Of a stretch of 64,000 bases of DNA, positions 27,352-48,107 are shown piece after piece; the stretch's first letter is position 1; every line of letters begins with the position of its first letter. A program made the translations under genes and the position numbers. The stretch covers positions 124,001 through 188,000 of IMG/VR virus record IMGVR_UViG_3300030099_004448, one strand, 5' to 3'. The notes beneath the pieces are model-generated. The model was given only the letters and a program-made list of their open reading frames with translations, did not search any database and was not told the DNA's origin.

Positions 27352-28452
27352 ATGTCTGAAACTAGAAAAACTGCACTGGTTCTCGGTGCAGGTGGATTTA
27401 TTGGAAGTCACATGGTGAAGAGACTCAAGTCCGAAGGATATTGGGTCCGTGGTGTAGATCTTAAGTACCCAGAATTTTCTGCAACTGCTGCAGATGAATT
27501 TGTTCAGGGTGATCTGCGTGATGTAGAATTCGTTCGTCGGGTCATTCAGTTCAAGGGTGAGCAAGGAAATTTCTATAATTCAGTACCTTACCGTTACATC
27601 CGTCCTTTCGACGAGATCTATCAGTTCGCTGCTGATATGGGTGGTGCAGGTTTCGTTTTCACTGGAGAGAATGATGCAGACATCATGCACAACTCCGTAT
27701 CTATCAACCTGAATGTCCTTGAGGAAGTTCGTAAACTCAATGAGACTTTTGATGGAGAACCTGCTAATCATGAGTGTGTGCGTCCTGCACTAGATCAACC
27801 TACTAAGATCTTCTATTCTGGTTCTGCTTGCATGTATCCAGAACACAACCAACTTGACCCTAATAATCCCGATTGCCGTGAAGAATCCGCATATCCAGCA
27901 AACCCTGATTCGGAATATGGATGGGAGAAACTCTTTAGTGAGAGACTCTACTTCGCATATCATCGCAACCATGGTATCCCTGTTAGGGTTACTCGTTATC
28001 ATAACATTTTTGGACCCGAAGGGACCTGGGAGGGTGGAAGAGAGAAAGCTCCAGCTGCAATCTGCCGTAAAGTCGCCTATCTTCCTGAGGAAGGTGGAGC
28101 AATCGAGGTGTGGGGAGACGGCTTACAGACTCGTTCCTTCCTGTTCATTGATGAATGCATTGAAGCGTCTCGACGGTTGATGGACTCCGACTTCATTGGA
28201 CCTGTAAACATTGGTTCTGAAGAGATGGTAACCATCAATGAACTTGTAGAAACTGCTGCTCGAGTCTCTGGGAAGGAAGTAAGAAAGATTCACAAACTGG
28301 ATGCTCCTCTGGGTGTTCGTGGACGCAACTCTAACAACGATGTTGTCCGCAGAGAACTTGGGTGGGATTATTCGCAAACTCTTGAGGAAGGTATTCGTAA
28401 AACCTACAACTGGATCTCTGAACAAATTATTAACAACCAAAATGAAAATTGA
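27352..28452 (+). CDS. NAD-dependent epimerase, GDP-mannose 3,5-epimerase (GME)-like
   Basis: GAGGFIG, AADMGG, SACMYPE, YGWEK, GTWEGGREKAPAAICRK and WGDGLQTRSF, all characteristic of GME-type extended SDRs. Confidence 0.88.
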   Translation: MSETRKTALVLGAGGFIGSHMVKRLKSEGYWVRGVDLKYPEFSATAADEFVQGDLRDVEFVRRVIQFKGEQGNFYNSVPYRYIRPFDEIYQFAADMGGAGFVFTGENDADIMHNSVSINLNVLEEVRKLNETFDGEPANHECVRPALDQPTKIFYSGSACMYPEHNQLDPNNPDCREESAYPANPDSEYGWEKLFSERLYFAYHRNHGIPVRVTRYHNIFGPEGTWEGGREKAPAAICRKVAYLPEEGGAIEVWGDGLQTRSFLFIDECIEASRRLMDSDFIGPVNIGSEEMVTINELVETAARVSGKEVRKIHKLDAPLGVRGRNSNNDVVRRELGWDYSQTLEEGIRKTYNWISEQIINNQNEN

Positions 28453-29011
28453 CATCGTTCGTGACGAAGTAAAGTCATTAGATATTGATCATCTCAAAGC
28501 TCTGTCACTCAATCCTAATGATTGGCAGGCAGCAGGTGTCAGTGAGTATCGACTCTATGCATATCTGTCTACTTTCTTTAATAAGACTACCATTCTAGAC
28601 ATTGGTACTAGAACTGGTGGTTCTGCCCTTTCACTTTCATACAATCCACAGAACACTGTACGCAGTTATGATCTTGTGGAACAGGGTGCAAGTACTATCA
28701 AAAAAGATAATCTTTCATTCTTCATTGGTAATTTCATGGAGGATGAAGATATCGACTGGGATAATGTTTCTATTGTCATGATCGATGTTGATCCTCACGA
28801 TGGTGCTCAGGAACGAGTCATGATGGACTGGTTGCGAGATAAAGGTTGGAAGGGTATCATGCTTCATGATGATATCGGTCCTGGTTGGCCTGATATCCAA
28901 CTCATGTGGGATGAAATTCCCGAACCTAAAATTGATGTTACTGAGATCGCTCACATGAGTGGTACTGGTCTTGTCAATTTTGGTGAAGCACACGAAGTCT
29001 CTGTTGTATGA
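28442..29011 (+). CDS. Class I SAM-dependent methyltransferase-like protein
   Basis: ILDIGTRTGGSA motif I; IDVDPHDG; LHDD. Confidence 0.7.
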   Translation: MKIDIVRDEVKSLDIDHLKALSLNPNDWQAAGVSEYRLYAYLSTFFNKTTILDIGTRTGGSALSLSYNPQNTVRSYDLVEQGASTIKKDNLSFFIGNFMEDEDIDWDNVSIVMIDVDPHDGAQERVMMDWLRDKGWKGIMLHDDIGPGWPDIQLMWDEIPEPKIDVTEIAHMSGTGLVNFGEAHEVSVV

Positions 29012-29862
29012 TGAAAATTCTTGTTCTTGGTTCTAGTGGTCAGGTTGGTGCATACCTGGTTGAGTATCTTCGTGAGAAAGGTCACGAAGTAATTGAGTTT
29101 GATAAAAACAAAGATCCTCATTGGCAGGATCTTACGGTGAATAATAATGCATATCTTATGGAGTGCATGATCAAGGCAGACTTTGTGTTCTTCCTTGCAT
29201 TTGACGTTGGTGGATCTAGGTATCTGAAGAAGTATCAACACACTTATCGATTCCTCCATAACAATACAAAGATGATGGCAAACGTCTTTGAACAACTTGA
29301 AGCCAATAAGAAACCATTTGTCTTTGCATCATCTCAGATGAGCAATATGTCTTACTCACCTTATGGTGTTGCTAAGAAGATGGGAGAACTATACACCAAA
29401 GCCCTTGGTGGTAAGATCGTTCACTTCTGGAATGTCTATGGTATTGAAAAAGACATGGACAAGGCACACGTCATCACTGACTTCATTAAGAAGGGATTTG
29501 AAACGGGTGATATCTCTATGTTGACAGATGGAACTGAACAACGTGAGTTCCTCTATGCAGAAGATTGTTGTGAAGCCTTAGAGTCTGTCATGGAAAACTA
29601 TGATAAACTCGATTCGGAAGATAATCTACACATCACTTCTTTTGAAGCAACTAGTATTCTTGATATTGGTCGCATCATCCAAGGATTGTTTGCAGAGGTT
29701 GGTCGTAGTGTAACTGTTACACCTGCAGAATCTAAAGACGAGGTTCAGAAAGATAAGAGAAATGAGGCAGACAGGTTCATTACTAAGTATTGGAATCCCA
29801 AAACCACAATTCAAGATGGTATTCGTAACGTATTTAATGACATGAAAGGAGAGTTCCTATGA
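29008..29862 (+). CDS. NAD-dependent epimerase/dehydratase
   Basis: LVLGSSGQVG; YGVAK (YxxxK); NVYG; DGTEQREFLY. Confidence 0.9.
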   Translation: MMKILVLGSSGQVGAYLVEYLREKGHEVIEFDKNKDPHWQDLTVNNNAYLMECMIKADFVFFLAFDVGGSRYLKKYQHTYRFLHNNTKMMANVFEQLEANKKPFVFASSQMSNMSYSPYGVAKKMGELYTKALGGKIVHFWNVYGIEKDMDKAHVITDFIKKGFETGDISMLTDGTEQREFLYAEDCCEALESVMENYDKLDSEDNLHITSFEATSILDIGRIIQGLFAEVGRSVTVTPAESKDEVQKDKRNEADRFITKYWNPKTTIQDGIRNVFNDMKGEFL

Positions 29863-30071
29863 AACTACTTACACTTGAAGATTATCAGAAGGCAGGTGAG
29901 ACTTTTTGGCCAAAGTATTGGTATGTTGCCAAAGAACTTGGTGAAGATGCCAAGGCAGAGGACATTTTGAAGTGCATGGAAGCTGTTGGTACAGTTGCAC
30001 TGAGATTCAAGATGGAAGAGAAAGAAGGTCCGTTCGGTTTTAACAAAACAGAAAAAAATAATGAAGATTAA
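29859..30071 (+). CDS. Small hypothetical protein
   Basis: ORF coupled to both neighbours. Confidence 0.65.
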   Translation: MKLLTLEDYQKAGETFWPKYWYVAKELGEDAKAEDILKCMEAVGTVALRFKMEEKEGPFGFNKTEKNNED

Positions 30072-30852
30072 TTTGATTTGCAACGACTCATTGTTGCCCT
30101 CTACATCAGACAAAAACACTGCTAAGAATACTGAATGGGTCTATGATGGATCGGGTGCGGTGAGTTTGTATGTCAATCAGAAATCTTTAGATATATTGCA
30201 AGATGTCTCTAGCACGCCTAAGTATATTTGGCTATTAGAGTCAAAACAAATTATCCAGGGGATCTATGATTGGATTCTTACAAACTATGACTTTGTTGCT
30301 TCCAGAGTGGACGGTATTTTTAGTTGCGATAAAGAACTCTGCGAAAAATATCCGAAGTTCTTTTACGCACTGAGTAACGCTGCACCATGGATTGAAGAAC
30401 GTCAGATCTATGAGAAGACTAAACTAGTCTCCATGATTTCTTCAAACAAAGCAATGGTTCCTGGTCATCGCAAGAGACTGGAATTCGTCCAAAAATTTAG
30501 AGATCAAGTTGATCTTTATGGTAGGGGATTTAATGACCTTCCCCGTAAGGAAGAGGGTATTCGAGATTACATGTTCTCTGTGGCAGTAGAGAACGCCGTC
30601 TATGATACATACTTTACGGAGAAACTTACAGACTGTTTCGCCACAGGAACGATTCCTGTCTTCTACGGTTGTAGAGGAGTCACAGAATATTTCAACGAAG
30701 ATGGAATTATATTCCTAGATGATGACTTTGACATTTCCACACTGACTGAAGATCTTTATCATTCCAAATTGGATGCGGTTAAAGATAACTTTGAACGTGC
30801 CAACAACCTGCCAGTGGCAGAAGATTATCTATATGAAACTTATTGGAAATGA
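30061..30852 (+). CDS. Glycosyltransferase, GT10 (alpha-1,3-fucosyltransferase)-like
   Basis: YMFSVAVEN...YFTEKLTDCFATGTIPVFYG, the GT10 signature. Confidence 0.8.
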   Translation: MKINLICNDSLLPSTSDKNTAKNTEWVYDGSGAVSLYVNQKSLDILQDVSSTPKYIWLLESKQIIQGIYDWILTNYDFVASRVDGIFSCDKELCEKYPKFFYALSNAAPWIEERQIYEKTKLVSMISSNKAMVPGHRKRLEFVQKFRDQVDLYGRGFNDLPRKEEGIRDYMFSVAVENAVYDTYFTEKLTDCFATGTIPVFYGCRGVTEYFNEDGIIFLDDDFDISTLTEDLYHSKLDAVKDNFERANNLPVAEDYLYETYWK

Positions 30853-31514
30853 GTAGTCGATTTAGTTATTTTGGAGAGAATGACATCACACTCACTGGTG
30901 TCATTCACGTCGGTGCCCACAGGGGTGAAGAGGTCAATGAATATGAAGACCTTGGCGCTAAACAAGTCATTTGGGTTGAAGCGAACCCTGATGTATTTGA
31001 AGAGATGCGTGTTGCATTGACTAATGCTGAATCTACTATTGAATCTCATGCATTTCAATACGCTGCAAGTACAGAGGATCATGCTACTGTAAAGTTCAAC
31101 AGATATTATGGACCCGATGCTGGTTATCTTAGGGGTAACAAGGGATGTTCATCTCTTCTGAAAGCAGAGGGTAGATTTGAAGCCTGGTATAAAGATACAA
31201 TCGAAGTAGAAACCATTACTATTGATACTCTTTTAGAAGAGAATGACTTCAAAGTAGAAGACTTCCAACTCCTAAACATGGATGTTCAGGGTGCTGAGTT
31301 AATGGTTTTGAGGGGTTCTGAAAAAGTCCTAGATAATGTGAAGTGGGTTACCACTGAAGCAACCTGGGAAGATCCTGATTACATTGACAACGTAATGTAT
31401 GATGAGTTAAAATCTTTCTTGGAATCTAAAGGATTTGTTGAGACACAAATTATTCCCCATGCAGAGAACTGGGGTGATGTTCTTTTTGTAAAGGAGACCC
31501 ATGAACAGAGTTAA
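30849..31514 (+). CDS. FkbM-family methyltransferase
   Basis: HVGAHRGEE, VEANP, TIDTLL, LNMDVQGAELMVLRG. Confidence 0.88.
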   Translation: MSSRFSYFGENDITLTGVIHVGAHRGEEVNEYEDLGAKQVIWVEANPDVFEEMRVALTNAESTIESHAFQYAASTEDHATVKFNRYYGPDAGYLRGNKGCSSLLKAEGRFEAWYKDTIEVETITIDTLLEENDFKVEDFQLLNMDVQGAELMVLRGSEKVLDNVKWVTTEATWEDPDYIDNVMYDELKSFLESKGFVETQIIPHAENWGDVLFVKETHEQS

Positions 31515-32259
31515 GGATTTTCAAGAGTTAGAAACAAGAATCGTGACATGGATTAAAGATTATGTCACTAAGAACAAACTGAATAGTCTTGTAGTCGGGG
31601 TATCTGGAGGCATTGATTCTGCAGTAGTCTCGACTCTTTGTGCTAGAACTGGTCTGCCGACCTATGTTCTCTCGATGCCACTGAACTCAAGTTCTGCAAA
31701 CGATGACCTTTCGGATTCATACTCTAATTTCCTTGAGGACAATTATGAGAATGTAACTAAAATTCGAGTGGATCTAGGTAAAGTTTATCAGTCATTCATG
31801 GACAGTCTTGACTTCTGGTGTGGTGATGGTGAATATACGACGAGTGGTCTAGCAAATGCGAATACTAAATCTCGTATGCGTATGGTAACTTTGTATCAAG
31901 TTGCAGGAACCACTGGTGGAATTGTTGTGGGAACAGGAAATAAGGTTGAAGATTATGGAGTTGGGTTCTATACTAAGTACGGTGACGGTGGTGTAGACAT
32001 TGCACCTATCGCAGATCTATACAAGACTGAAGTATGGGAACTTGGTAAACACCTTGGTGTTGATCAACGTATCATTGATGCTCCTCCTACTGATGGTCTT
32101 TGGGATGACAGTCGAACTGATGAAGATCAGATTGGTGCATCCTATGAAGATCTAGAATATGCCATGGAACATGGAACTGGTCCTGCAGTCCGAATCCTCC
32201 ATGACTATCATACAAAAAACAAGCACAAAATGAATCCTATCCCGACTTTTGAACTATGA
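31501..32259 (+). CDS. nadE: NH3-dependent NAD+ synthetase
   Basis: GVSGGIDSAV (PP-loop), NTKSRMRM, GTGNKVE, TKYGDGGVD, PIADLYKTEV, PPTDGLW. Confidence 0.93.
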   Translation: MNRVKDFQELETRIVTWIKDYVTKNKLNSLVVGVSGGIDSAVVSTLCARTGLPTYVLSMPLNSSSANDDLSDSYSNFLEDNYENVTKIRVDLGKVYQSFMDSLDFWCGDGEYTTSGLANANTKSRMRMVTLYQVAGTTGGIVVGTGNKVEDYGVGFYTKYGDGGVDIAPIADLYKTEVWELGKHLGVDQRIIDAPPTDGLWDDSRTDEDQIGASYEDLEYAMEHGTGPAVRILHDYHTKNKHKMNPIPTFEL

Positions 32260-33401
32260 AAATTGGTCTTATTGGTGCAGGAAGACTCGGTATCTGTCTT
32301 GCTCTCTTGATCGAGAGGGCTGGGTATAATGTTTTGGTATCTGATATTCGTCCTGATTACGTTGACGCCTTAAATAGGAAGGAGATCGTAACGGAGGAAC
32401 CTGATGTCCAGTGGCTCCTTAAACAAACGGAAAGATTCGAGGCGACTTGGGAAAACCAACGTGTCATCGACGAGTGCGACTTTATTATTTGTCTTGTTGC
32501 AACTCCTTCTCTTAATGATGGTTCTTATGATATAAGTTCTGTTTGGAATGTTGTTGAAGACTTCAAAAAGTCTGAATCAAAACTAAACGGAAAAACTCTG
32601 GTGGTTGGATGTACAACTAACCCAGGAGATTGTGAGAAATTTAGTGAAGAGCTTTCATACTTTGGAGTGAATGTCGTTTACAATCCTGAATTTATTGCAC
32701 AGGGTACTATTGTTAGTGATTTGCAAAATGCAGATATGGTTCTCATCGGTGGTGCTGATGATGAGACCTATGAGTTCATGCAAGAAATTTATAGTCGCAT
32801 CCAAGCAAGTCCGCCTCGGTGGGGACGAATGTCTACAACTGCTGCAGAACTTGTAAAGATCGCAGTAAATTGTTTTCTGACTATGAAAATTAGTTATGCC
32901 AACATGGTTGGTGAAGTCATGATTCAAGCAGGTCTTGCGGATGAAATCGAGGGAGTCATGCAAGCCATCGGAGACGACTCTAGAATCGGAAATAAATATC
33001 TTAAGTTCGGGTATGGATTTGGTGGTCCATGTCTTCCAAGAGACAATCGTGCCTTTGCATCATTTGCATCTAAGGTTGGTGTCAAGTATAATCTTGGTGA
33101 GACTACTGATAACTTCAATGACGAACATGCGAAGTTCCTCTGTAATTACTATTTGAGCAAGAACAAAGATAGTAAACCCTTCTACTTCCGATATGTTTCA
33201 TATAAGGAAGGAACGGACATCCTTACGGAAAGTCAACAGTATCGCCTCTGCGAGGATCTTTTGTATCAAGGATACACTTGTTATGTTGACGACAACGAAA
33301 GTATTATCACCCAACTAAAACAAAATTCCAAATTAGATGTCACTAGACTTAAGTTTGGAAAACCACCAGAAGATGTACAAGTTATTGAGATTGACCTATG
33401 A
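32256..33401 (+). CDS. ugd: UDP-glucose/GDP-mannose 6-dehydrogenase family protein
   Basis: IGAGRLG, VATPS, YNPEFIAQG, AELVK...N, GFGGPCLPRD. Confidence 0.88.
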   Translation: MKIGLIGAGRLGICLALLIERAGYNVLVSDIRPDYVDALNRKEIVTEEPDVQWLLKQTERFEATWENQRVIDECDFIICLVATPSLNDGSYDISSVWNVVEDFKKSESKLNGKTLVVGCTTNPGDCEKFSEELSYFGVNVVYNPEFIAQGTIVSDLQNADMVLIGGADDETYEFMQEIYSRIQASPPRWGRMSTTAAELVKIAVNCFLTMKISYANMVGEVMIQAGLADEIEGVMQAIGDDSRIGNKYLKFGYGFGGPCLPRDNRAFASFASKVGVKYNLGETTDNFNDEHAKFLCNYYLSKNKDSKPFYFRYVSYKEGTDILTESQQYRLCEDLLYQGYTCYVDDNESIITQLKQNSKLDVTRLKFGKPPEDVQVIEIDL

Positions 33402-34258
33402 TCGGGTACAACAGACTCGGAAGTAACGGACGTTTGGGAAACCAAATGTTTCAATATGCATCATTAAGAGGCATTGCAGATAAAAATGGATATGATTGGT
33501 GTATTCCTCCTGAGGAATATGATCATAAGGATAACTATGGTTTGTTTGAAACTTTCAAACTAATTAGTGTTGCGCCAAAGAATATTGGATTTGTTCAGGG
33601 TGATTATGTGCAAGAAAATGATCATTGTTTTTTAGAAGACTTTTTCAATGTTCTTCCAGACAACGTTAGTTTAGATGGATACTTTCAAACAGAAAAATAC
33701 TTCTCGCACATTAGAGAAGAAATACTCGCGGATTACACATTCAGGGACGATTTCTTCCTTCCTTGTAAACAGTATGTTGATAGTCTGGATGTGCCTCCTA
33801 TCTTCCTGCATATTCGTCAGTCTGATAACATCGGAAGAGAAGAATACCACCCCATTCTTCCCCTTACATATTATGAAGAAGCTCTGAAAGAGTTTCCTGA
33901 AGATACCCCTTGTTTTGTTCTTACAGACGATATTGAGTGGTGTAAGAAACAACCGTTCTTTGATAATGATAGATTCATGTTCAATGAGAACAATGATCGG
34001 TATCAATACCAGACTATTGATGGTCTTGGACGTATGCAGAATACTCTTCTGCCCCAGGTTGATCTCTGTCTTATGAGTCTTTGTTCTGGTGCTATCATTG
34101 CAAACTCATCATTCTCTTGGTGGGGAGCATGGTTGCAGGATGATGCGGGTAAGGTTGTTGCACCTAATCCTAAGAAGTGGTTTGGTACTGCCATGACGCA
34201 TCTAGATACCTCAGACATCGTGCCTCATCGTTGGATTATTAAAGAGTGGAGTAAGTAA
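33398..34258 (+). CDS. GT11 alpha-1,2-fucosyltransferase-like #1
   Basis: GRLGNQMFQYA, GYFQTEKYF, HIR, IIANSSFSWWGAWL. Confidence 0.92.
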   Translation: MIGYNRLGSNGRLGNQMFQYASLRGIADKNGYDWCIPPEEYDHKDNYGLFETFKLISVAPKNIGFVQGDYVQENDHCFLEDFFNVLPDNVSLDGYFQTEKYFSHIREEILADYTFRDDFFLPCKQYVDSLDVPPIFLHIRQSDNIGREEYHPILPLTYYEEALKEFPEDTPCFVLTDDIEWCKKQPFFDNDRFMFNENNDRYQYQTIDGLGRMQNTLLPQVDLCLMSLCSGAIIANSSFSWWGAWLQDDAGKVVAPNPKKWFGTAMTHLDTSDIVPHRWIIKEWSK

Positions 34259-35154
34259 TGGCTGTAACATTTAAAGGACTTGGTAACGAGGGTCGCCTTG
34301 GTAACCAAATGTTTCAATATGCCTTTGTCCGAGGTGTGGCTGCAAACCGTGGATTTGATTGGATGATCCCTGGCCCAAATGCAGATAGACTTGATAACTA
34401 TGGTTTGTTCGATGCATTTGAACTAACCAACTGCGATCTAAATAGGAACACTGGAGAACCCTTCTACAAAACAGTAGAATATAGGGATATGCACTTCAAT
34501 GAAGAAATCTATGACCGTTGCGAGGACAATACCAATTTCTCTGGTAATTTCCAAACGGAGAGATATTTTGAGACAATCGCGGCGTCTATCCGTGAGGATT
34601 TCACTTTTAAAAAGGCGTATCTGGAACCGTGCCAAGATTTTATTGATAGTCTTGGTGGACGTGATGAGTGTATCTTTTTGCACGTTCGTAGAGGTAATCC
34701 GAATCTTACTGGACGTAGAGGGGAAAAGTGGTCTTATCAGATGGTGCAAGAATACCACCCTCTCTGTAAAGCTGAATATTATGTACGGGCCCTCCAAGAG
34801 TTCCCCGAAGACAAAACAGTCATCGTCGTCTCAGACGTAATCGACTGGTGTAAGAAACAACCCTATCTTCAGGGAGATCGATTCCAATTCTCAGACTCAT
34901 CTTATGAGGTCTTTGGTGATGGTGCATCCGTTCCTTATGTTGACCTCTGTTTAATGAGTCTTTGTGGTGGTGCTATCATCGCCAACTCTTCTCTATCATG
35001 GTGGGGTGCATGGTTGCAAGGTGATACAGGAAAGGTAGTTGTACCCGATCCCTGGTTTGGACCTGCATATGACCACTACAACATGAAGGATATGATTCCA
35101 GATCGATGGGTCAAACTCCACAACGATCCATCCCCAGTTACTCCAGAACAATGA
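34258..35154 (+). CDS. GT11 alpha-1,2-fucosyltransferase-like #2
   Basis: GRLGNQMFQYA, HVRRG, IIANSSLSWWGAWL. Confidence 0.92.
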   Translation: MAVTFKGLGNEGRLGNQMFQYAFVRGVAANRGFDWMIPGPNADRLDNYGLFDAFELTNCDLNRNTGEPFYKTVEYRDMHFNEEIYDRCEDNTNFSGNFQTERYFETIAASIREDFTFKKAYLEPCQDFIDSLGGRDECIFLHVRRGNPNLTGRRGEKWSYQMVQEYHPLCKAEYYVRALQEFPEDKTVIVVSDVIDWCKKQPYLQGDRFQFSDSSYEVFGDGASVPYVDLCLMSLCGGAIIANSSLSWWGAWLQGDTGKVVVPDPWFGPAYDHYNMKDMIPDRWVKLHNDPSPVTPEQ

Positions 35155-35966
35155 AAGATTTAACATTCCTATTACCATGTCGCATTGAGTCTGAAGATCG
35201 ACTCAAAAATGTAATTACATCTACGACATATCTCCTCAAGAACTTTCCAGAAGCAAAAGTAATTCTGAAAGAAGTTGATACCAGGTCACACTTCAAGTTT
35301 CGTGCCCTACCTATCATCAAAAAGTATGTAAATACGGATCAACTCACTCACATCTTTGAGGAGAGTAATGAGAAGTTCTTTCATAAGACTCGTATCTTGA
35401 ATGATCTTTTGGTTGCTTCTGATACTTCTATCGTTTATAATCATGACGTGGATGTAGTTCTTCCCAAAGAAAGTTATGAACTCGCATACGCTGCAATTAA
35501 AAAGGGTCAATCTGATGCAGTATATCCTTTTGGTTGCGGAGTCTATCAATGGGCTGTAAACTATTCCGAATCAATTTTCAGTCAGTTCTTGGATTCTGAT
35601 TTTGATTTCAGTACACTTGATGAAGGTAAATTTAGAGTTGCTTCATCTATTGGTTGGGGTCAAATGATCAAAAGAGATACTGAGATTGAAGTTGGTATGT
35701 GGAATGAAAACTTCATCTCATGGGGTGCGGAGGATTGTGAGTTCTACTTCCGTCTGAATAGTTTTGGTCGAAAGGTGGGTAGAGTTCTTGGTGACATCTA
35801 TCACTTTGAACACGGTAGAACATTCAACTCGCACTACCATAATCCCAAGTTCATGGATAACCACAATCTATGGCAAGATATTAGAACGTGGGATGCCGAT
35901 AAACTTATTGAGTATTATCAAAAACAAGATTACAACGCAAAGAGGTTAGAAGAACTGTCATGCTAG
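35151..35966 (+). CDS. GT-A fold glycosyltransferase (GT2/GT7C-like)
   Basis: FHKTRILN, HDVD (DxD), WNENFISWGAEDCEF, YHFEH. Confidence 0.85.
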   Translation: MKDLTFLLPCRIESEDRLKNVITSTTYLLKNFPEAKVILKEVDTRSHFKFRALPIIKKYVNTDQLTHIFEESNEKFFHKTRILNDLLVASDTSIVYNHDVDVVLPKESYELAYAAIKKGQSDAVYPFGCGVYQWAVNYSESIFSQFLDSDFDFSTLDEGKFRVASSIGWGQMIKRDTEIEVGMWNENFISWGAEDCEFYFRLNSFGRKVGRVLGDIYHFEHGRTFNSHYHNPKFMDNHNLWQDIRTWDADKLIEYYQKQDYNAKRLEELSC

Positions 35967-36814
35967 CAATTAATGAGCTCGGGAACATGGGTCGTCTAGG
36001 AAACCAGATGTTCCAATATGCAGCAACGCGAGGACTTGCAGCTGCAAAGGGGTATGAATGGTGTATTCCACCTTTTACGACTCCCAGGATTGATAACTAC
36101 AGTCTTGCTAATTGTTTTACCATGGAGAGTGTTACTCCTAGTAATCAATACATCCTTGATCGTGGACATGCTCCAGTAGTTATGGAAAAACAGTTCCACT
36201 TCGATGAGGAACTGATGCAATTGTGTCCCAATGATGTTTCTTTGTATGGATTTTTCCAGACTGAGAAGTATTTTGCACACATTCGAGATGAAATTCGTAG
36301 GGACTTTACTTTCCATGAAGATCTGACGGTTCCCATCCAAGGATTCCTTAACGATCTGAAAGATCCTATCTTCTTGCATGTACGTCGTGGTGATCCCAAC
36401 CTTGTCGATGCTCGTGGATTTAAGTGGTCTTACACTCAGTGTTCTTCTATGCACCCGCCACAAGGCGTTGAGTACTACGAAGAGGCGTTGAAACAATTCC
36501 CAGACGATCAAGAGGTTGTCGTCGTCTCAGACTCGCCTGAGTGGGTTATGGAACAGGAACTATTCAAACCTGATCGTTTCTTTGTTTCTACACCCGAAGA
36601 GAAGTATCCTGATGGATCTTATACTCCTTATATTGACCTCTGTTTGATGGCGAATTGTAAGGGTGCTATCATTGCAAACTCTACTCTTTCTTGGTGGGGT
36701 GCATGGTTGCAGAATGGTGCTGGTAAAGTCATTGCACCTAAGAACTGGTTCGGTCCAGATTACGCTGATAAAGATACTAAAGATTTGTACTGTGAGGGTT
36801 GGGAAGTTATTTGA
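35960..36814 (+). CDS. GT11 alpha-1,2-fucosyltransferase-like #3
   Basis: GRLGNQMFQYA, GFFQTEKYF, HVRRGD, ANSTLSWWGAWL. Confidence 0.92.
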   Translation: MLAINELGNMGRLGNQMFQYAATRGLAAAKGYEWCIPPFTTPRIDNYSLANCFTMESVTPSNQYILDRGHAPVVMEKQFHFDEELMQLCPNDVSLYGFFQTEKYFAHIRDEIRRDFTFHEDLTVPIQGFLNDLKDPIFLHVRRGDPNLVDARGFKWSYTQCSSMHPPQGVEYYEEALKQFPDDQEVVVVSDSPEWVMEQELFKPDRFFVSTPEEKYPDGSYTPYIDLCLMANCKGAIIANSTLSWWGAWLQNGAGKVIAPKNWFGPDYADKDTKDLYCEGWEVI

Positions 36815-37605
36815 TGGATAAGAATAAGTCTGTATCTAAACTGAAAGGTATGGGACCCATCTATTACATCAACTTAGATGGGCAACCAGAACGCAAACAG
36901 TACATGGAAGACATGTTTGCACATTGGGAAATTGAAAACTACGAACGTATTTCTGCATATGATGGTAGAGAGGATGATCTAAGCGACATCCTCCACGGTC
37001 GTTATCCAGAAAATATGAGTTCTGGTGAGATTGGGTGTGTAACCTCTCACCTTAAACTCCTTAAACATTTTCTAGAGACATCTGATGCACCATACTGTGT
37101 GGTGATGGAAGATGATGTTGATATTAATGTTGCTAAGTATTGGACTTTCACTTGGAATCAACTTTATGCAAGATTCCCCTATGATTATGATGTTGTTCAG
37201 TTGGCAGTCATCTGCCCTGGTACACTTCACGTCAATCTACACAGGAGATTTGTAAACGATTTCTCCACGGCGTGTTATGTCATTACACGTCACCATGCGG
37301 AAAAGGTGGTTCGCCTCCATTGTCGGGGGGAAAAGTATAAACTAGACTATAAAATCAAGCCACGTGCTGTTGCAGACGATTTGATCTATAACTCTGGTAA
37401 TACGTTCGCCTTGCCTATATTTCTCTATAAGATTGAGTTGGGGTCCTCAATTCATCCTGAACATATTGAGATTTTCCATCGAGGATCACATGACGGTTTA
37501 CGAGAACTCTGGGAAAGACAAGGATCGACACTAGAAATTGATAGATTGATGGAGTGGGATCCGTATTTGGGACGAACGTCAGAAGGTCCTCAAAAAAATA
37601 CTTGA
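36814..37605 (+). CDS. GT25-family glycosyltransferase
   Basis: YYINLD...ERKQYM, GEIGCVTSH, VVMEDDV, STACYVIT. Confidence 0.85.
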   Translation: MDKNKSVSKLKGMGPIYYINLDGQPERKQYMEDMFAHWEIENYERISAYDGREDDLSDILHGRYPENMSSGEIGCVTSHLKLLKHFLETSDAPYCVVMEDDVDINVAKYWTFTWNQLYARFPYDYDVVQLAVICPGTLHVNLHRRFVNDFSTACYVITRHHAEKVVRLHCRGEKYKLDYKIKPRAVADDLIYNSGNTFALPIFLYKIELGSSIHPEHIEIFHRGSHDGLRELWERQGSTLEIDRLMEWDPYLGRTSEGPQKNT

Positions 37606-38105: not shown

Positions 38106-38119
38106 AAAGATTTGATACC

Positions 38120-38269
38120 ATGACCAACGAGAACGCACTGTGGGAAGACATGCGAAGACTCAATGCCCTATACGAAGAACTCTGCTGGGGGCACGATGAT
38201 GAACTTATTTTTACTCACGAAAACGGTAGAGTCGTAATCTTTAACCAATCCTTGGAGAAAAAACAATGA
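38120..38269 (+). CDS. Small hypothetical protein (49 aa)
   Basis: Manual translation MTNENALWEDMRRLNALYEELCWGHDDEL...; stop overlaps the next hli ATG. Confidence 0.55.
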   Translation: MTNENALWEDMRRLNALYEELCWGHDDELIFTHENGRVVIFNQSLEKKQ

Positions 38270-38373
38270 CTGAAAGAGCAGAACGTATTAACGGTTGGGC
38301 CGCAATGATCGGTGTAATCGCAGCAATTGGATCCTATGCAGCAACAGGTCAAATCATTCCAGGTATCTGGTGA
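38266..38373 (+). CDS. hli: High-light-inducible protein (35-aa short form)
   Basis: MTERAERINGWAAMIGVIAAIGSYAATGQIIPGIW: AERxNGWxAMIG and TGQIIPG motifs. Confidence 0.92.
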   Translation: MTERAERINGWAAMIGVIAAIGSYAATGQIIPGIW

Positions 38374-38434
38374 TGGGATTTTTAGTAGCAGCAGTGCTGA
38401 TGCTAATTCCTATTGCAGCAGTAGCAATTAAGTC

Positions 38435-38572: not shown

Positions 38573-38576
38573 ATAC

Positions 38577-38601
38577 GAGGAGGGAAACCTCCTCATTTTT
38601 T
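38577..38601 (+). terminator. Intrinsic terminator
   Basis: GAGGAGG-GAAA-CCTCCTC followed by a T-tract. Confidence 0.75.
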
Positions 38602-38612
38602 ATGGGATTATT

Positions 38613-41003
38613 ATGTTAACCAACACAATTACGGATGGAGTAAAGGAACGTCTTCTGTACACACTAGGAAAGCGTCCCGAATCTGCCTCTGCACACGATG
38701 TCTACATGGCACTTTGTTATGCCGTTAGAGATCGAATGATTGATAATCATTTAGTTGAAAAGCCATATAAGAAGGAAGTTGCATATTTGTCTGCAGAGTT
38801 CCTTATTGGACCGCAGTTGAGTAACAACTTACTCAATTTGGATATTCGCAAAGAAGCTGCTGCAGCAGTTGGTCAGTTTGGATATGATTTGGATGAGATT
38901 TTAGAATTGTCTGAAGAACCTGGACTTGGAAATGGTGGTCTAGGTAGACTTGCTGCATGTTACATGGAATCCATGGCAACTCTAAAAGTTCCTGCCACTG
39001 GATATGGTATTAGATATAAGTACGGTATTTTCAAACAAACAATCCGTGACAATCAACAGGTAGAAGTCACCGATAATTGGTTGCATGGAGATTGGCCATG
39101 GGAAGTTTGTTATCCAGATGAATCTGTCATGATCGGATTCGGGGGAAAGGTAGAACACTATGAGTTTGATGATAATGACCATAGAGTTCGTTGGGCACCT
39201 CAACAACATGTGGTTGCAGTTCCTTATGATGTTTTGCAAGCAGGATATAAAGTAGATAGTTGTGCAAAGATTAGACTCTGGAGAGCAGACGCTATTGATG
39301 TGTTTGACTTCAAAGCATTCAACCAGGGAGACTATCTGGGATCCGTAGAGAACAGTGTAACCACGGAGACTATCTCAAAAGTTCTTTATCCAAATGATGG
39401 AACCACTCAAGGAAAAGAACTGAGATTAAAACAGCAGTTCTTCTTTGTGAGTGCTTCTCTTCAGGACATGATCAGAAGTCTCAAAGAACGTGATCTACCT
39501 CTCGAAGAGTTCTACAACTATTATCAAGTTCAGTTAAATGATACTCATCCATCAGTTGCGGTTGCAGAACTAATGAGACTTCTTATGGATGATCACCACA
39601 TGGAGTGGGATCTTGCATGGGATATTACAAGTAAGTCGATTGCATATACCAATCACACACTACTTCCAGAGGCACTGGAGAAGTGGAGTGTAAGTCTGTT
39701 TGAAAAACTCCTACCCAGACACTTGGAGATCATTTATGAAATCAATTCCAGATTCCTCCAGATCGTCAGAATGCACTACCCAGGAGACGAAGAAATCCTC
39801 AGAAAACTGTCCATCATTGATGAGACGGGTGGTAGATTTGTCCGCATGGCCAATCTTGCAACAGTCGGATCTCACCATATCAATGGTGTTGCTTCACTTC
39901 ACTCAGATCTGATCACTAAGAACCTCATGCCTGAGTTCTATGACCTTTGGCCTCACAAGTTCACCAATGTAACCAATGGTGTGACTCCTCGTCGCTGGTT
40001 GGCAGACTCTAACCCTGCACTTGCTGAGGTTCTTACAAATTGCGTTGGTGATGAATGGGTTACTGATATGACTCGTCTCAGTGATCTAGAGAAGTTTGCT
40101 GATGATCCTATTGTTCTTGAAAAGATTGGTGCGACAAAACTCATTGGTAAACATAAACTGGCACAATATATACAGAAGACACTTGGCATCTCAGTTGATC
40201 CGTCAAGTATGTTTGATGTACAAGTAAAGAGGATTCATGAATACAAACGACAGCATCTCCTTGCTCTATGGATTGTGTCTCGGTATTTGTATATCAAAAA
40301 TCATAAAGACGATTATGTTGTTCCACGTACAGTAATCTTTGGTGGTAAAGCCGCACCTGGTTACTATATGGCGAAAGAGATTATTCGTTTCATTTGTAAT
40401 CTTGCGGAGACTGTCAACTCAGATCCTGATATGGATGGAAAGTTGCGTGTGGTATTCCTACCTAACTATAGTGTGAAGTTGGGTGAGAAAGTCTATCCCG
40501 CTGCGGATCTCTCTGAACAGATCTCAACCGCAGGTAAGGAAGCATCTGGTACTGGTAATATGAAGTTCCAGATGAATGGTGCTCTGACTATTGGTACACT
40601 CGATGGTGCAAATGTAGAGATTCGTGACTTGGTAGGTGAAGAGAACTTCTTCCTCTTTGGTAATACTGAAGAAGAGATCGGTGATCTATGGAAGAATGGT
40701 TATGATCCTAAAGAACACATGAGTTCTGGATTGTTTGAGTCGATTGAATTAATCAAGTCTGGTCACTTCTCGAATGGTGATAAGAATGCATTTGTTTCTA
40801 TCATTGATAATCTGCTGCAGAGTGATCCATTCTGTGTCTGTGCAGACTTTGCAGATTATTGCCGTGCCCAGAACGTTGTAGATAACACCTGGGGTAATAG
40901 AGAGGAATGGAATCGTAGATCTCTGATGAACATTGCTAGATCTGGATTCTTCTCATCCGATAGATCTATTCAAGATTACTGTGACAACATCTGGAAAATA
41001 TGA
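38613..41003 (+). CDS. glgP: Glycogen/starch/alpha-glucan phosphorylase (GT35)
   Basis: YLSAEFLIG, GLGNGGLGRLAAC, QLNDTHP, YTNHTLLPEALE, VKRIHEYKRQHL, GGKAAPGY and the PLP-lysine motif EASGTGNMKF; 796 aa, uninterrupted. Confidence 0.97.
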   Translation: MLTNTITDGVKERLLYTLGKRPESASAHDVYMALCYAVRDRMIDNHLVEKPYKKEVAYLSAEFLIGPQLSNNLLNLDIRKEAAAAVGQFGYDLDEILELSEEPGLGNGGLGRLAACYMESMATLKVPATGYGIRYKYGIFKQTIRDNQQVEVTDNWLHGDWPWEVCYPDESVMIGFGGKVEHYEFDDNDHRVRWAPQQHVVAVPYDVLQAGYKVDSCAKIRLWRADAIDVFDFKAFNQGDYLGSVENSVTTETISKVLYPNDGTTQGKELRLKQQFFFVSASLQDMIRSLKERDLPLEEFYNYYQVQLNDTHPSVAVAELMRLLMDDHHMEWDLAWDITSKSIAYTNHTLLPEALEKWSVSLFEKLLPRHLEIIYEINSRFLQIVRMHYPGDEEILRKLSIIDETGGRFVRMANLATVGSHHINGVASLHSDLITKNLMPEFYDLWPHKFTNVTNGVTPRRWLADSNPALAEVLTNCVGDEWVTDMTRLSDLEKFADDPIVLEKIGATKLIGKHKLAQYIQKTLGISVDPSSMFDVQVKRIHEYKRQHLLALWIVSRYLYIKNHKDDYVVPRTVIFGGKAAPGYYMAKEIIRFICNLAETVNSDPDMDGKLRVVFLPNYSVKLGEKVYPAADLSEQISTAGKEASGTGNMKFQMNGALTIGTLDGANVEIRDLVGEENFFLFGNTEEEIGDLWKNGYDPKEHMSSGLFESIELIKSGHFSNGDKNAFVSIIDNLLQSDPFCVCADFADYCRAQNVVDNTWGNREEWNRRSLMNIARSGFFSSDRSIQDYCDNIWKI

Positions 41004-41686
41004 ACATTTGGGTTGGGTATGACACCCGTGAACACTGGGCATTCAAGGTCTGTGATTACAGCATCCGCAAATACAGACCTGATGCAATCGTAAAACCGAT
41101 TGAACAACGAAACACAAGACTTCTTGGTCTCTACGATAGACCTATAGATGAGAATGCCTCTACTGAGTTTTCTCTAACTAGATTTCTAACGCCTGCACTA
41201 TCAAACTTTAAGGGATGGTCACTTTACTGTGATTGTGACTTTCTCTTTTTGAATGATGTTAAAAAGTTATTTGATCTTGCTGATCCTAAGTACGCTGCAA
41301 TGGTGGTCAAACATGACTATAAACCAAAGAGTAATACAAAGATGGATGGTCAAATTCAGTTTCCATATCCTAGAAAGAACTGGAGTTCTTTGATCTTATT
41401 CAATAACGAACATCCATCCCATAAGTTTTTGGATGTCAATGGTATGACTCCTGCAGAGCTGCACCAGTTTGACTGGATTGCAGACAAAGATCTGGGTGAA
41501 TTGCCTAAACGGTGGAATTGGTTGGTTGGTTATTGCACCGATGAAGACCTATGGTCTGATATTCCAGCTGCATTACATTACACAGATGGTGGACCATGGT
41601 TTGAAGAGACTAAAGACTGTGATTACTCTGGTTTGTGGAATCAATATTATGAGGAGTGTCTAGATGCAAATAAAATATATCGTTGA
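41000..41686 (+). CDS. GT8-like glycosyltransferase resembling plant CDI
   Basis: VGYDTRE, STEFSLTRFL, DCDF (DxD), VVKHDY, KMDGQ, YPRKNWSS, HYTDGGPWF. Confidence 0.85.
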   Translation: MNIWVGYDTREHWAFKVCDYSIRKYRPDAIVKPIEQRNTRLLGLYDRPIDENASTEFSLTRFLTPALSNFKGWSLYCDCDFLFLNDVKKLFDLADPKYAAMVVKHDYKPKSNTKMDGQIQFPYPRKNWSSLILFNNEHPSHKFLDVNGMTPAELHQFDWIADKDLGELPKRWNWLVGYCTDEDLWSDIPAALHYTDGGPWFEETKDCDYSGLWNQYYEECLDANKIYR

Positions 41687-47451: not shown

Positions 47452-47805
47452 ATGCATGGTAAACTTGATCCAGAAGATAATGTTATGGATGACGGAATCG
47501 TTTCAAAACGCAAAGCGATTGCAGTATGCAATCAGAGTGTAGTACAAGAACTTTACGATGTAATCGCAAAACTTGGATGGGGCTGCTATGACAACGTTAC
47601 TGTTGAGATTGGTGGTACTGCAGTTTCTGGTATTGATGTTGGTGAGGAGTACAACAAAAAGTGGCAGTCGCCAATAGGTACTCGCAAGTATAATAAAGAC
47701 GCATTTATTATCATCAAGAACCAGGATCGTAGAGACCTGACTAAATCACAACCTTTCCCCGAAGGTGAATTTAAACCTCAACATCCTCACGAAGAAAAGA
47801 AATGA
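47452..47805 (+). CDS. Hypothetical protein
   Basis: 117-aa ORF after psbA. Confidence 0.7.
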   Translation: MHGKLDPEDNVMDDGIVSKRKAIAVCNQSVVQELYDVIAKLGWGCYDNVTVEIGGTAVSGIDVGEEYNKKWQSPIGTRKYNKDAFIIIKNQDRRDLTKSQPFPEGEFKPQHPHEEKK

Positions 47806-48107
47806 CTAAATTTTTGATGTTCACCAAACACTCCTGTGGACCCTGTGGTCTTGTTAAAAAATACATTACCGCACTAGAGGATTCACGGGAACATATCATT
47901 GAAGAAATCTATTTGGAAGATTTTTCCGATGAACCTATCTCCGAAGAGAATCTTGCATCTGCTAAAAAGTATGGTGTAACTGCAACTCCAGTCCTTGTGA
48001 TTGCGGATGAAGATGGTGAACTTCTAGAGACTTTTGTTGGAGGTATGTCTATCACTCAGAACATTCGTAGTCTCTGGGATAAGTATGAGATTCCTCACAA
48101 AGACTAA
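47802..48107 (+). CDS. Thioredoxin/glutaredoxin-like protein
   Basis: CGPC active site and cis-Pro motif ATPVL. Confidence 0.85.
   Translation: MTKFLMFTKHSCGPCGLVKKYITALEDSREHIIEEIYLEDFSDEPISEENLASAKKYGVTATPVLVIADEDGELLETFVGGMSITQNIRSLWDKYEIPHKD

What the first reader, a model, noticed from the sequence alone, without database searches (positions are those of the whole stretch)
38613..41003. Full-length glycogen phosphorylase in a cyanophage, feeding the phage pentose-phosphate genes
Seen: an intact 796-aa GT35 phosphorylase with the PLP-lysine motif, coupled to phage genes on the same strand, in a window that also has zwf, gnd and talC. Established: cyanophages commonly carry zwf/gnd/talC to drive the oxidative pentose phosphate pathway, but glgP is not among the usual cyanophage auxiliary genes as far as I know. 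Inference: the phage can mobilise the host glycogen store itself (glycogen to G1P to G6P to NADPH and ribose-5-P). This could support replication in darkness or supply sugar phosphates to the glycosylation operon.
Basis: partly seen in the sequence, partly recalled or inferred. Interest (0 to 1): 0.82.

Follow-up and report, generated by a model that had tools for sequence, protein, structure and literature searches.

The report
Cyanophage-encoded glycogen phosphorylase, regulatory tails removed
A large marine cyanophage carries an intact glycogen-degrading enzyme taken long ago from its picocyanobacterial hosts; the gene is common in uncultured cyanophages but almost unstudied, and every phage copy lacks the two end-peptides of the host enzyme, one of which acts as a regulatory switch in a model cyanobacterium.

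Summary
Window 38613-41003 (+) is an intact 796-aa GT35 alpha-glucan phosphorylase with every checked catalytic and PLP-binding motif, inside a complete 239-kb T4-like cyanomyovirus record.

It is not a chimera:
- Error-free contigs from two independent marine DNA runs bridge both gene ends.
- The isolate S-SCSM2R has a syntenic copy (88.9% aa), annotated but not discussed in its paper.

It is rare in isolates (1 cyanophage among 50,697 phage records) but common in uncultured phages. At least 194 IMG/VR contigs carry it, at three or more different T4-like genome positions.

Phage copies form one clade (100/100), sister to picocyanobacterial GlgP (61-66% identity), with dN/dS of 0.06-0.12.

New here: all 84 phage copies lack the host's conserved 24-aa N-terminal and roughly 10-aa C-terminal peptides, and three host-conserved cysteines. 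In Synechocystis GlgP1 the C-terminal peptide is a thioredoxin-sensitive redox switch.

Most likely function: a phosphorylase free of host control releases glucose-1-phosphate from host glycogen, feeding the phage Zwf/Gnd/TalC pentose-phosphate genes through host phosphoglucomutase. The phage has no pgm, debranching enzyme or sugar-1-P nucleotidyltransferase. Function and deregulation are inferred, not tested.

Verdict: a new member of a known kind (cyanophage auxiliary metabolic genes).

The parts
38613..41003 (+). glgP: 796-aa GT35 alpha-glucan (glycogen) phosphorylase of the phage type. It has the catalytic core only and lacks the host's N- and C-terminal peptides. Key residues: G108-G111, H312, N455, K539/R540/K545, E643, T647, and the PLP lysine K651 (codon 40563-40565).
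38577..38602 (+). Terminator-like hairpin (7-bp GC-rich stem, GAAA loop) followed by a T-run. It lies between the stop of a small upstream ORF (38570-38572) and the glgP ATG. It may partly insulate glgP from the hli transcripts upstream.
   Evidence: In RNA run X19 the contigs cover 37886-38364 but none of glgP; this is weak evidence.
38266..38373 (+). 35-aa single-helix ORF resembling a high-light-inducible protein. Its ATG overlaps the stop of the DUF7191 gene (38102-38269).
   Evidence: Sequence read directly. tblastn shows 54% similarity to the window's other hli gene at 37654-37884. DUF7191 is from Pfam.
41000..41686 (+). 228-aa gene whose ATG overlaps the glgP stop (ATGA). It gives a weak GT8 (retaining glycosyltransferase) hit. 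Its S-SCSM2R orthologue (76% identity) is annotated as a GT24 family protein.
27352..37605 (+). Upstream sugar-modification cluster: two NAD-dependent epimerase/dehydratases, GT10, an FkbM methyltransferase, NAD synthase, UDP-glucose 6-dehydrogenase (32256-33401), three GT11, a GT2-like gene and GT25.
   Evidence: The cluster is syntenic with S-SCSM2R ORF240-248.
1..987 (+). zwf (glucose-6-phosphate dehydrogenase), 3' part. The gene starts upstream of the window. It is the proposed downstream consumer of glycogen-derived G6P.
   Evidence: G6PD_C, 301 bits.
1154..2275 (+). gnd (6-phosphogluconate dehydrogenase).
57765..58412 (+). talC (transaldolase).
   Evidence: TAL_FSA, 174 bits.
47802..48107 (+). 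Thioredoxin-like protein. It matters only for the speculative redox argument: a phage thioredoxin alongside a phosphorylase that has no redox tail.
   Evidence: Thioredoxin_2, 35.7 bits.

Best explanation
The gene is a functional, phage-adapted glycogen (alpha-1,4-glucan) phosphorylase. It is an auxiliary metabolic gene acquired once, long ago, from the picocyanobacterial lineage, and is now maintained in a sizeable group of T4-like marine cyanomyoviruses.

Shown:
- It keeps the full GT35 catalytic core and the PLP lysine.
- It is under strong purifying selection.
- It is phage-borne in many independent assemblies.
- Every phage copy lacks the host enzyme's conserved N-terminal 24-aa peptide, its C-terminal tail of roughly 10 aa, and three host-conserved cysteines.

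Inferred mechanism:
- During infection the enzyme uses inorganic phosphate, not ATP, to clip glucose-1-phosphate from the outer chains of host glycogen.
- Host phosphoglucomutase converts this to glucose-6-phosphate.
- The phage's own Zwf and Gnd oxidise it to NADPH and ribulose-5-phosphate, with TalC helping to make ribose-5-phosphate for nucleotide synthesis.
- Because it lacks the cyanobacterial regulatory tails, the phage enzyme probably works independently of the host's light/redox control of glycogen breakdown.
- In this genome and in S-SCSM2R, some glucose-1-phosphate may also be drawn off, via a host UDP-glucose pyrophosphorylase, for the neighbouring UDP-glucose dehydrogenase and glycosyltransferases.
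For: Identity:
- PF00343 at 1039 bits over the full length and TIGR02093 at 1132.6 bits.
- Best solved relative is 9wvu, an 855-aa alpha-1,4-glucan phosphorylase (E 1e-296).
- The GGLGRLA, LNDTHP, TNGVTPRRW, VKRIHEYKRQ and EASGTGNMKF motifs are all kept when aligned to muscle phosphorylase.

Phage-borne:
- The record is a complete 239-kb virus genome.
- S-SCSM2R has a syntenic orthologue at 88.9% aa.
- 14 DNA runs from at least 5 studies hold 73-99% of the sampled words of window 37300-42300.
- Zero-mismatch contigs in runs X5 and X8 bridge 38364-39248 and 40304-42300.
- 194 IMG/VR contigs carry it, and more than 120 metagenome protein clusters are 72-98% identical.
- The gene occurs in three unambiguous T4-like contexts: DUF7191/petF then glgP then psbA; nrdA-nrdB then glgP then SegE; gp44-gp62-regA then glgP then hsp20-gp43-uvsX.

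Origin:
- Picocyanobacterial GlgP is 61-66% identical; the best other bacteria are 53-55%.
- In the careful IQ-TREE run (80 rows) the phage clade has 100/100 support, and is sister at 100/100 to the primary Cyanobiaceae GlgP clade (99/94).

Selection:
- dN/dS is 0.06-0.12 in 12 phage pairs with dS of 0.7-1.7.
- Gene GC is 41.4% against 38.9% for the phage genome.

Tail loss:
- All 84 phage copies lack both tails, and C281A is fixed.
- In-frame upstream room is 22 codons or fewer in 83 of 84 copies.
- The cyanobacteria-specific C-terminal extension is a regulatory peptide. In Synechocystis GlgP1 it is a Cys837/Cys842 switch inhibited by reduced thioredoxin (bioRxiv 10.1101/2022.11.21.517384; PMC12892837).

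Pathway partners:
- zwf, gnd and talC are in the same genome.
- zwf is present in all 3 complete glgP-carrying genomes and in 2 of 3 fragments.

Possible expression:
- Seawater metatranscriptome runs hold contigs 93-97% identical across glgP.
Against: - No enzyme assay exists, and there are no infection-time expression or metabolite data for any phage GlgP.
- The phage has no phosphoglucomutase and no debranching enzyme, so the route depends on host proteins surviving infection. Without debranching only the outer glycogen chains are accessible.
- In Synechocystis GlgP1, deleting the C-terminal peptide lowered activity to the level of the reduced enzyme rather than raising it. Tail loss therefore need not mean a hyperactive enzyme.
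- The picocyanobacterial tails carry one cysteine each, not the Cys-x4-Cys pair of Synechocystis, and their regulatory role is unproven.
- The NCBIfam equivalog models cannot separate glycogen from maltodextrin specificity; both score below cut-off.
- The RNA-library contigs could derive from contaminating DNA, and they come from relatives rather than this exact phage.
Confidence: 0.7

Rival explanations
1. The main role is to supply glucose-1-phosphate for nucleotide-sugar synthesis (UDP-glucose, then UDP-glucuronate). These sugars would be used by the phage's own glycosyltransferase cluster to modify the host surface or the virion, rather than to fuel the pentose-phosphate pathway.
For: - In this genome and in S-SCSM2R, glgP lies inside a roughly 20-kb sugar-modification cluster. 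The cluster includes UDP-glucose 6-dehydrogenase, several glycosyltransferases and epimerases, and kdsA/kdsB further on.
- glgP is translationally coupled (ATGA overlap) to a GT8/GT24-like gene.
- One metatranscriptome contig spans that junction.
Against: - The association is not conserved. Most phage glgP copies sit after nrdAB, between regA and gp43, or directly before psbA.
- No sugar-1-phosphate nucleotidyltransferase (PF00483) was found in the phage genome.
- The two roles are not mutually exclusive.
Confidence: 0.2
2. The enzyme acts on soluble maltodextrins or another alpha-glucan rather than glycogen granules (a MalP-like role), or it runs in the synthetic direction.
For: - The NCBIfam MalP equivalog scores slightly higher than the GlgP equivalog (911 against 887.5 bits), both below cut-off.
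- The protein is 796 aa, the same length as the E. coli MalP chains in the solved-structure table.
Against: - The closest relatives are the GlgP of picocyanobacteria, which is the only GT35 gene in most of the small genomes searched.
- The region aligned to the muscle enzyme's glycogen-storage site is well conserved, for example the IIYEIN motif.
- From general knowledge of cellular Pi and glucose-1-phosphate levels, the physiological ratio favours phosphorolysis.
Confidence: 0.08
3. The gene is an assembly chimera or a piece of host DNA packaged or binned with the phage. Alternatively it is a decaying passenger gene with no function.
For: - The window comes from a metagenome-derived virus record.
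- psbA in the same window carries a frameshift-like defect that may be an assembly error.
Against: - Both junctions are bridged by error-free contigs in independent runs.
- An isolate phage has the same synteny.
- 194 viral contigs carry the gene.
- The protein is only 61-66% identical to any host GlgP.
- The phage clade is monophyletic at 100/100.
- dN/dS is 0.06-0.12.
Confidence: 0.02

Closest known systems
Picocyanobacterial (Prochlorococcus / marine Synechococcus / Cyanobium) glycogen phosphorylase GlgP
   Same: - It is the sister clade in the tree (100/100).
- Identity is 61-66% over the whole core.
- The catalytic and PLP motifs are the same.
   Different: - The phage proteins lack the host's conserved N-terminal peptide (24 aa, containing the motif LRLPTPGC) and its C-terminal tail (roughly 10 aa, ending in a motif like PVxITCD).
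- Cys281 is fixed to Ala.
- Fixed substitutions cluster at residues 155-208.
Synechocystis sp. PCC 6803 GlgP1 with its C-terminal Cys837/Cys842 redox switch (Neumann et al., bioRxiv 10.1101/2022.11.21.517384)
   Same: It is a cyanobacterial GT35 phosphorylase. The best solved-structure hit, 9wvu, is 855 aa, the length expected for this enzyme (an inference from length only). The phage protein aligns to its residues 35-832.
   Different: The phage protein stops at the equivalent of about residue 833. That is just before the regulatory peptide, so it cannot carry that switch.
Cyanophage carbon-metabolism auxiliary genes (zwf, gnd, talC, cp12)
   Same: - Host-derived and phage-maintained.
- Located in the variable auxiliary-gene islands of T4-like cyanophages.
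- Co-occurs with zwf, gnd and talC.
- Fits the accepted model in which phages push host carbon into the pentose-phosphate pathway (PMC10452541).
   Different: - It acts one step upstream, on the storage polymer itself.
- It is much rarer in isolates.
Synechococcus phage S-SCSM2R ORF260, annotated 'carbohydrate phosphorylase' (PQ898602)
   Same: It is the orthologue: 88.9% aa identity, the same downstream neighbour, and the same general island.
   Different: Its immediate upstream genes are petF and a peroxiredoxin, rather than small hli-like ORFs. The gene is annotated but not discussed in the paper.
E. coli GlgP / MalP and mammalian glycogen phosphorylase
   Same: The fold family and the catalytic residues are the same.
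   Different: - It scores below the NCBIfam equivalog cut-offs for both E. coli enzymes.
- It has no Ser14 phosphorylation segment.
- Of the Arg309/Arg310 pair in the AMP site, only one arginine is kept.
- The 280s gate loop differs: NDGTTQG against NDNFFEG.

Membership tests
GT35 alpha-glucan phosphorylase (Pfam PF00343 / TIGR02093) | Full-length match to the family profile above the curated cut-off | tested here: met
   PF00343 scores 1039 bits against a cut-off of 27, covering profile 3-713/713. TIGR02093 scores 1132.6 against 552.9.
GT35 alpha-glucan phosphorylase (Pfam PF00343 / TIGR02093) | PLP Schiff-base lysine in the EASGTGNMK motif | tested here: met
   K651 aligns with Lys680 of muscle phosphorylase.
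GT35 alpha-glucan phosphorylase (Pfam PF00343 / TIGR02093) | Phosphate- and glucosyl-site residues: Gly134-137 loop, His377, Asn484, Lys568/Arg569/Lys574, Glu672, Thr676 | tested here: met
   The aligned residues are G108-G111, H312, N455, K539/R540/K545, E643 and T647. All are identical in the alignment.
GT35 alpha-glucan phosphorylase (Pfam PF00343 / TIGR02093) | Phosphorolytic activity on alpha-1,4-glucan | not testable with these tools
   This needs a recombinant enzyme assay.
Cyanobacterial GlgP with terminal regulatory peptide | Cyanobacteria-specific C-terminal extension (redox-active in Synechocystis GlgP1) | tested here: not met
   All 84 phage proteins end within about 2 residues of the conserved IW(K)(I/V) core end. 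The host tail of 10-22 residues is absent.
Cyanobacterial GlgP with terminal regulatory peptide | Conserved picocyanobacterial N-terminal peptide (24 aa with the LRLPTPGC motif) | tested here: not met
   It is absent from all 84 phage copies. An in-frame stop lies 0-22 codons upstream of the start in 83 of 84.
E. coli-type GlgP or MalP equivalogs (NCBIfam NF011562 / NF011561) | Score above the equivalog cut-off | tested here: not met
   GlgP equivalog: 887.5 against 1546. MalP equivalog: 911 against 1273.
Cyanophage auxiliary metabolic gene | Encoded on a bona fide phage genome, flanked by phage genes | tested here: met
Cyanophage auxiliary metabolic gene | Cellular (host-lineage) origin, with a distinct phage clade under purifying selection | tested here: met
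   Tree; dN/dS of 0.06-0.12.
Cyanophage auxiliary metabolic gene | Expressed during infection and altering host metabolism | tested here: inconclusive
   Metatranscriptome libraries contain contigs 93-97% identical to the gene. DNA carry-over cannot be excluded, and no infection experiment exists.

The most novel reading that the evidence does not exclude
Phage GlgP is a deliberately 'unplugged' enzyme.

- Picocyanobacterial GlgP may be held under light/redox control through its two terminal peptides, possibly by a disulfide between the conserved N-tail and C-tail cysteines.
- Those two cysteines co-occur across Cyanobiaceae. All 39 sequences inspected that have the N-tail Cys also have the C-tail Cys, and 3 of the 5 without the N-tail Cys lack it.
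- The phage lineage removed both peptides and a third cysteine.
- Glycogen could then be mobilised whatever the redox state that the phage's own photosynthesis and thioredoxin genes impose. This would decouple carbon-store breakdown from the host's day/night programme and could allow replication at night or in deep, low-light water.
Probability: 0.3. Interest if true: 0.72.

Novelty: new member of a known kind. Interest (0 to 1): 0.6.

Why it matters
Cyanophages are known to push host carbon into the pentose-phosphate pathway with zwf, gnd, talC and cp12. Where the glucose-6-phosphate comes from once the Calvin cycle is shut down has been assumed, not shown.

A phage-encoded glycogen phosphorylase would place the first step of that route, tapping the host's storage polymer, under viral control. 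The gene is widespread in ocean viromes, old and selectively maintained.

The consistent removal of the host enzyme's terminal peptides gives a concrete, testable hypothesis. It concerns how phages escape the host's diel/redox regulation, and it bears on why some cyanophages can replicate in darkness.

One cultured phage, S-SCSM2R on Synechococcus WH7803, carries the gene, so the question can be addressed experimentally.

Tried and rejected
- **Chimera or host contamination:** rejected.
- **Phage-encoded completion of the pathway:** searches for phosphoglucomutase (PF02878), sugar-1-P nucleotidyltransferase (PF00483) and alpha-amylase/GlgX-type debranching enzyme (PF00128) found nothing in this genome, S-SCSM2R, or a third complete relative.
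- **Late-promoter lead:** a CTAAATA motif lies 38 nt before the ATG. The motif is not enriched in the window (7 found, 11 expected), so no promoter claim is made. The link of this motif to cyanophage late promoters comes from memory only.
- **Literature:** seven full-text searches found no study of a cyanophage glycogen phosphorylase. The only mention is one sentence in a review (PMC10452541), which lists host glycogen phosphorylase among proteins still made during S-SM1 infection that have homologues in phages or viral fragments. The primary paper could not be read. No supplementary files were held for the S-SCSM2R paper.
- **Structure prediction:** not run. A sequence match to solved structures at E 1e-296 makes the fold certain, and the tool returns no inter-residue distances to test the proposed cysteine pairing.
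- **Scripted cysteine co-occurrence count:** the anchors failed for several rows, so the counts given elsewhere come from the printed termini.
- **Representative-library search:** it added only distant clusters (53% identity or less) and no closer cellular donor.
Full report
**1. Observation**

The ORF at window 38613-41003 (+ strand, ATG start, 796 aa) is the only long ORF at that place. It matches Pfam PF00343 (carbohydrate phosphorylase) from profile position 3 to 713 of 713 at 1039 bits. It matches TIGR02093 at 1132.6 bits against a cut-off of 552.9. It falls below the NCBIfam equivalog cut-offs for E. coli GlgP (887.5 against 1546) and MalP (911 against 1273), so it belongs to the family but to neither enterobacterial orthologue group.

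Against solved structures the best hit is 9wvu, an 855-aa alpha-1,4-glucan phosphorylase (E 1e-296), followed by muscle and liver glycogen phosphorylases (about E 1e-236). In those alignments all the catalytic signatures I checked are intact:
- the glycine loop GGLGRLA (G108-G111);
- LNDTHP (H312, equivalent to His377);
- TNGVTPRRW (N455, equivalent to Asn484);
- VKRIHEYKRQ (K539/R540/K545, equivalent to Lys568/Arg569/Lys574);
- EASGTGNMKF, with the PLP lysine K651 (equivalent to Lys680).

The eukaryotic regulatory features are absent or altered. These are the Ser14 segment, the Arg309/Arg310 pair and the 280s loop.

**2. Genome context**

The window is bases 124001-188000 of an IMG/VR virus record of 238,937 bp that CheckV rates 100% complete. 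A 20-kb stretch around the gene matches 444 cyanophage records by megablast. The best is Synechococcus phage S-SCSM2R (244 kb, host WH7803, South China Sea) at 82% nucleotide identity over 57% of the query.

- zwf runs over the left edge of the window, to 987;
- gnd is at 1154-2275;
- talC is at 57765-58412.

Upstream of glgP lies a sugar-modification cluster. It holds epimerase/dehydratases, GT10, an FkbM methyltransferase, NAD synthase, UDP-glucose 6-dehydrogenase, three GT11, a GT2-like gene and GT25. Then come hli genes, a DUF7191 gene and small ORFs.

Downstream, the ATG of a 228-aa GT8-like gene overlaps the glgP stop as ATGA. Further on are psbA, a thioredoxin-like gene, plastocyanin, ferredoxin and psbD. 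The 40-nt gap before the glgP ATG holds a terminator-like hairpin with a T-run. Coupling to downstream genes is therefore clear, and coupling to upstream genes is doubtful.

**3. Is the linkage real?**

Yes, on four grounds.
- S-SCSM2R, a cultured phage, has an orthologue (ORF260, annotated 'carbohydrate phosphorylase', 88.9% aa) with the same downstream neighbour.
- Fourteen DNA runs from at least five studies hold 73-99% of the sampled words of window 37300-42300.
- In two of those runs, from different studies (X5, X8), contigs with no mismatches cover 38364/38370 to 39079/39248 and 40304/40358 to beyond 42300. Both ends of the gene are thus bridged into phage sequence.
- The protein is only 61-66% identical to any picocyanobacterial GlgP, so it cannot be host DNA.

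**4. Distribution**

Among 50,697 deposited phage records the only cyanophage hit is S-SCSM2R. The other hits are gut 'Bacteriophage sp.' contigs or bacterial records at under 47% identity.

In metagenomes the picture is different:
- The 120 best protein clusters are 72-98% identical to the query.
- 194 IMG/VR contigs encode a relative.

Neighbour analysis shows at least three genome positions, all unmistakably T4-like cyanophage:
- (i) hli/DUF7191/petF, then glgP, then psbA or glycosyltransferase genes. This covers the window, S-SCSM2R, L084, L087 and L088.
- (ii) nrdA-nrdB, then glgP, then a SegE-type GIY-YIG endonuclease. This covers L083, L085/86, L089-L097 and many others.
- (iii) gp44-gp62-regA, then glgP, then hsp20, gp43 DNA polymerase and UvsX, with purC nearby (L099).

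Alleles 90% identical to the window's (L085/86) sit at the nrdB position, so the gene has moved between positions.

**5. Origin and selection**

A careful maximum-likelihood tree was built (80 rows, 804 columns, LG+C20+F+G4). Support values are ultrafast bootstrap / SH-aLRT.

| Grouping | Support |
|---|---|
| Phage sequences as one clade | 100/100 |
| Primary Cyanobiaceae GlgP as one clade | 99/94 |
| These two clades as sisters | 100/100 |
| Second picocyanobacterial paralogue joining next | 100/98 |

Other bacteria (53-55% identity) lie outside. The earlier quick tree agrees.

The simplest reading is a single old capture from the picocyanobacterial lineage. The phage clade branches outside the sampled host crown, which means either an early transfer or faster phage evolution. 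No donor species can be named.

Pairwise dN/dS within the phage clade is 0.06-0.12 at dS of 0.7-1.7. The gene's GC content (41.4%) is close to that of the phage genome (38.9%).

**6. What distinguishes the phage enzyme**

All 30 top picocyanobacterial GlgPs begin with a conserved 24-aa peptide containing the motif LRLPTPGC. They end with a conserved tail of 10-22 residues containing a motif like PVxITCD. More divergent Cyanobiaceae mostly share both.

All 84 phage proteins lack both peptides. An in-frame stop lies 0-22 codons upstream of the start in 83 of 84 copies. A third host-conserved cysteine is fixed to alanine (C281A). Several further fixed substitutions cluster at residues 155-208.

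Published work shows that a C-terminal extension is specific to cyanobacterial GlgPs and acts as a regulatory peptide (bioRxiv 10.1101/2022.11.21.517384; PMC12892837). In Synechocystis GlgP1 it carries a Cys837/Cys842 disulfide switch. The enzyme is active when oxidised and inhibited by reduced thioredoxin.

The phage protein aligns to residues 35-832 of the 855-aa structure 9wvu, so it stops just before that region.

Caveats:
- Deleting the tail in Synechocystis lowered activity.
- The picocyanobacterial tails carry one cysteine each.
- Whether they regulate anything is unknown.

**7. Mechanism**

Shown: an intact, conserved, phage-borne GT35 core without the host tails.

Inferred:
- The enzyme carries out phosphorolysis of host glycogen to glucose-1-phosphate.
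- Host phosphoglucomutase converts this to glucose-6-phosphate.
- Phage Zwf, Gnd and TalC oxidise it to NADPH and pentose phosphates for nucleotide synthesis.

Evidence on the partner enzymes:
- zwf is present in all three complete glgP genomes and in two of three fragments.
- No phosphoglucomutase, alpha-amylase/GlgX-family debranching enzyme or sugar-1-P nucleotidyltransferase was found in the phage genomes. The phage therefore supplies only the first step.

The alternative sink is UDP-glucose for the neighbouring UDP-glucose dehydrogenase and glycosyltransferases. That is plausible for this genome and S-SCSM2R, but it cannot be the general rationale given the variable gene position.

Seawater metatranscriptome libraries contain contigs 93-97% identical across glgP, including one that crosses into the downstream gene. 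This is suggestive only, because DNA carry-over is possible.

**8. Known or new**

The gene is annotated in GenBank for S-SCSM2R and by JGI on some contigs as 'glycogen/starch phosphorylase'. The S-SCSM2R paper never mentions it.

My literature searches found no study of a cyanophage glycogen phosphorylase. The only mention is one review sentence, which relays that host glycogen phosphorylase, still synthesised during S-SM1 infection, has homologues in phages or viral fragments.

I therefore rate it a new member of a known kind (cyanophage carbon-metabolism auxiliary genes). It has one feature of its own, the systematic loss of both host terminal peptides, which makes a specific regulatory hypothesis testable in an available phage-host pair.

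**9. Verdict**

- Interest is moderate to high (0.6).
- Confidence is about 0.9 that this is a functional phage GlgP of picocyanobacterial origin.
- Confidence is about 0.6 for the glycogen-to-pentose-phosphate role.
- Confidence is about 0.3 for the escape-from-redox-control reading.

Noticed in passing
window 46340-47387: psbA is split into two frames: 46340-46630 (96 aa) and 46533-47387 (284 aa). Compared with S-SCSM2R PsbA, residues 81-98 are missing. About 44 nt are absent near 46594-46605, which causes a frameshift. This is either an assembly error in the metagenome-derived record or a real pseudogene.
   Followed up: partly
L166-L195, L003, L276-L290 (picocyanobacterial GlgP loci): Host GlgP carries a conserved cysteine in the N-terminal peptide (PTPGC) and another in the C-terminal tail (ITC/ISC). 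All 39 sequences inspected with the N-tail Cys also have the C-tail Cys. Of the five without it (PSSY-type), three lack the C-tail Cys. This pattern would fit a tail-to-tail disulfide in the host enzyme.
   Followed up: partly
L083 12408-12878; also L093-L097, L105, L108, L122 and others: Where glgP follows nrdB, it is usually followed within 30-45 nt by a SegE-type GIY-YIG homing-endonuclease gene. This may explain how the gene moves between phage genomes and positions.
   Followed up: no
contigs behind P0037 and P0045 (L084): Two long-read metagenome contigs carrying phage-type glgP are 481,176 and 482,719 bp. That is almost exactly twice the roughly 240-kb genome size of this phage group. 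They may be concatemer or duplicated assemblies rather than larger genomes.
   Followed up: no
window 27180-27280 and 46221-46314: A wcaG RNA motif lies just upstream of the first epimerase/dehydratase of the sugar cluster. A PhotoRC-II RNA motif lies just upstream of psbA. Both score above the Rfam gathering scores.
   Followed up: no
window 23585-24889, 25047-26327, 56187-57152: There are three radical-SAM proteins. In the first two the SPASM iron-sulfur domain matches at the N-terminus, ahead of the radical-SAM core, which is the reverse of the usual order.
   Followed up: no
window 52951-54357: kdsB (CMP-Kdo synthetase, + strand) and kdsA (Kdo-8-phosphate synthase, - strand) converge and overlap by about 39 nt, as in S-SCSM2R.
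   Followed up: no
window 31501-32259: An NAD synthase gene is embedded in the glycosyltransferase cluster, immediately upstream of the NAD-dependent UDP-glucose 6-dehydrogenase and overlapping it.
   Followed up: no
window 18719-26600 and 52215-52287: There are eight tRNA genes (Arg-TCT, Asn, Leu-TAG, Gly-TCC, Val-TAC, Pro-TGG, Met, Ala-TGC). Seven lie between 18.7 and 26.6 kb.
   Followed up: no
window 8325-14549 (- strand), 14733-16199: Two large minus-strand ORFs: 775 aa with a subtilase domain, and 1294 aa with no Pfam hit. Next to them is a carbamoyltransferase gene.
   Followed up: no
G083:C1:19658-20463 (contig of L097): zwf of this related glgP-carrying phage fragment is split into two adjacent frames (G6PD_C positions 1-174 and 181-288). 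This is a possible frameshift or assembly error.
   Followed up: no
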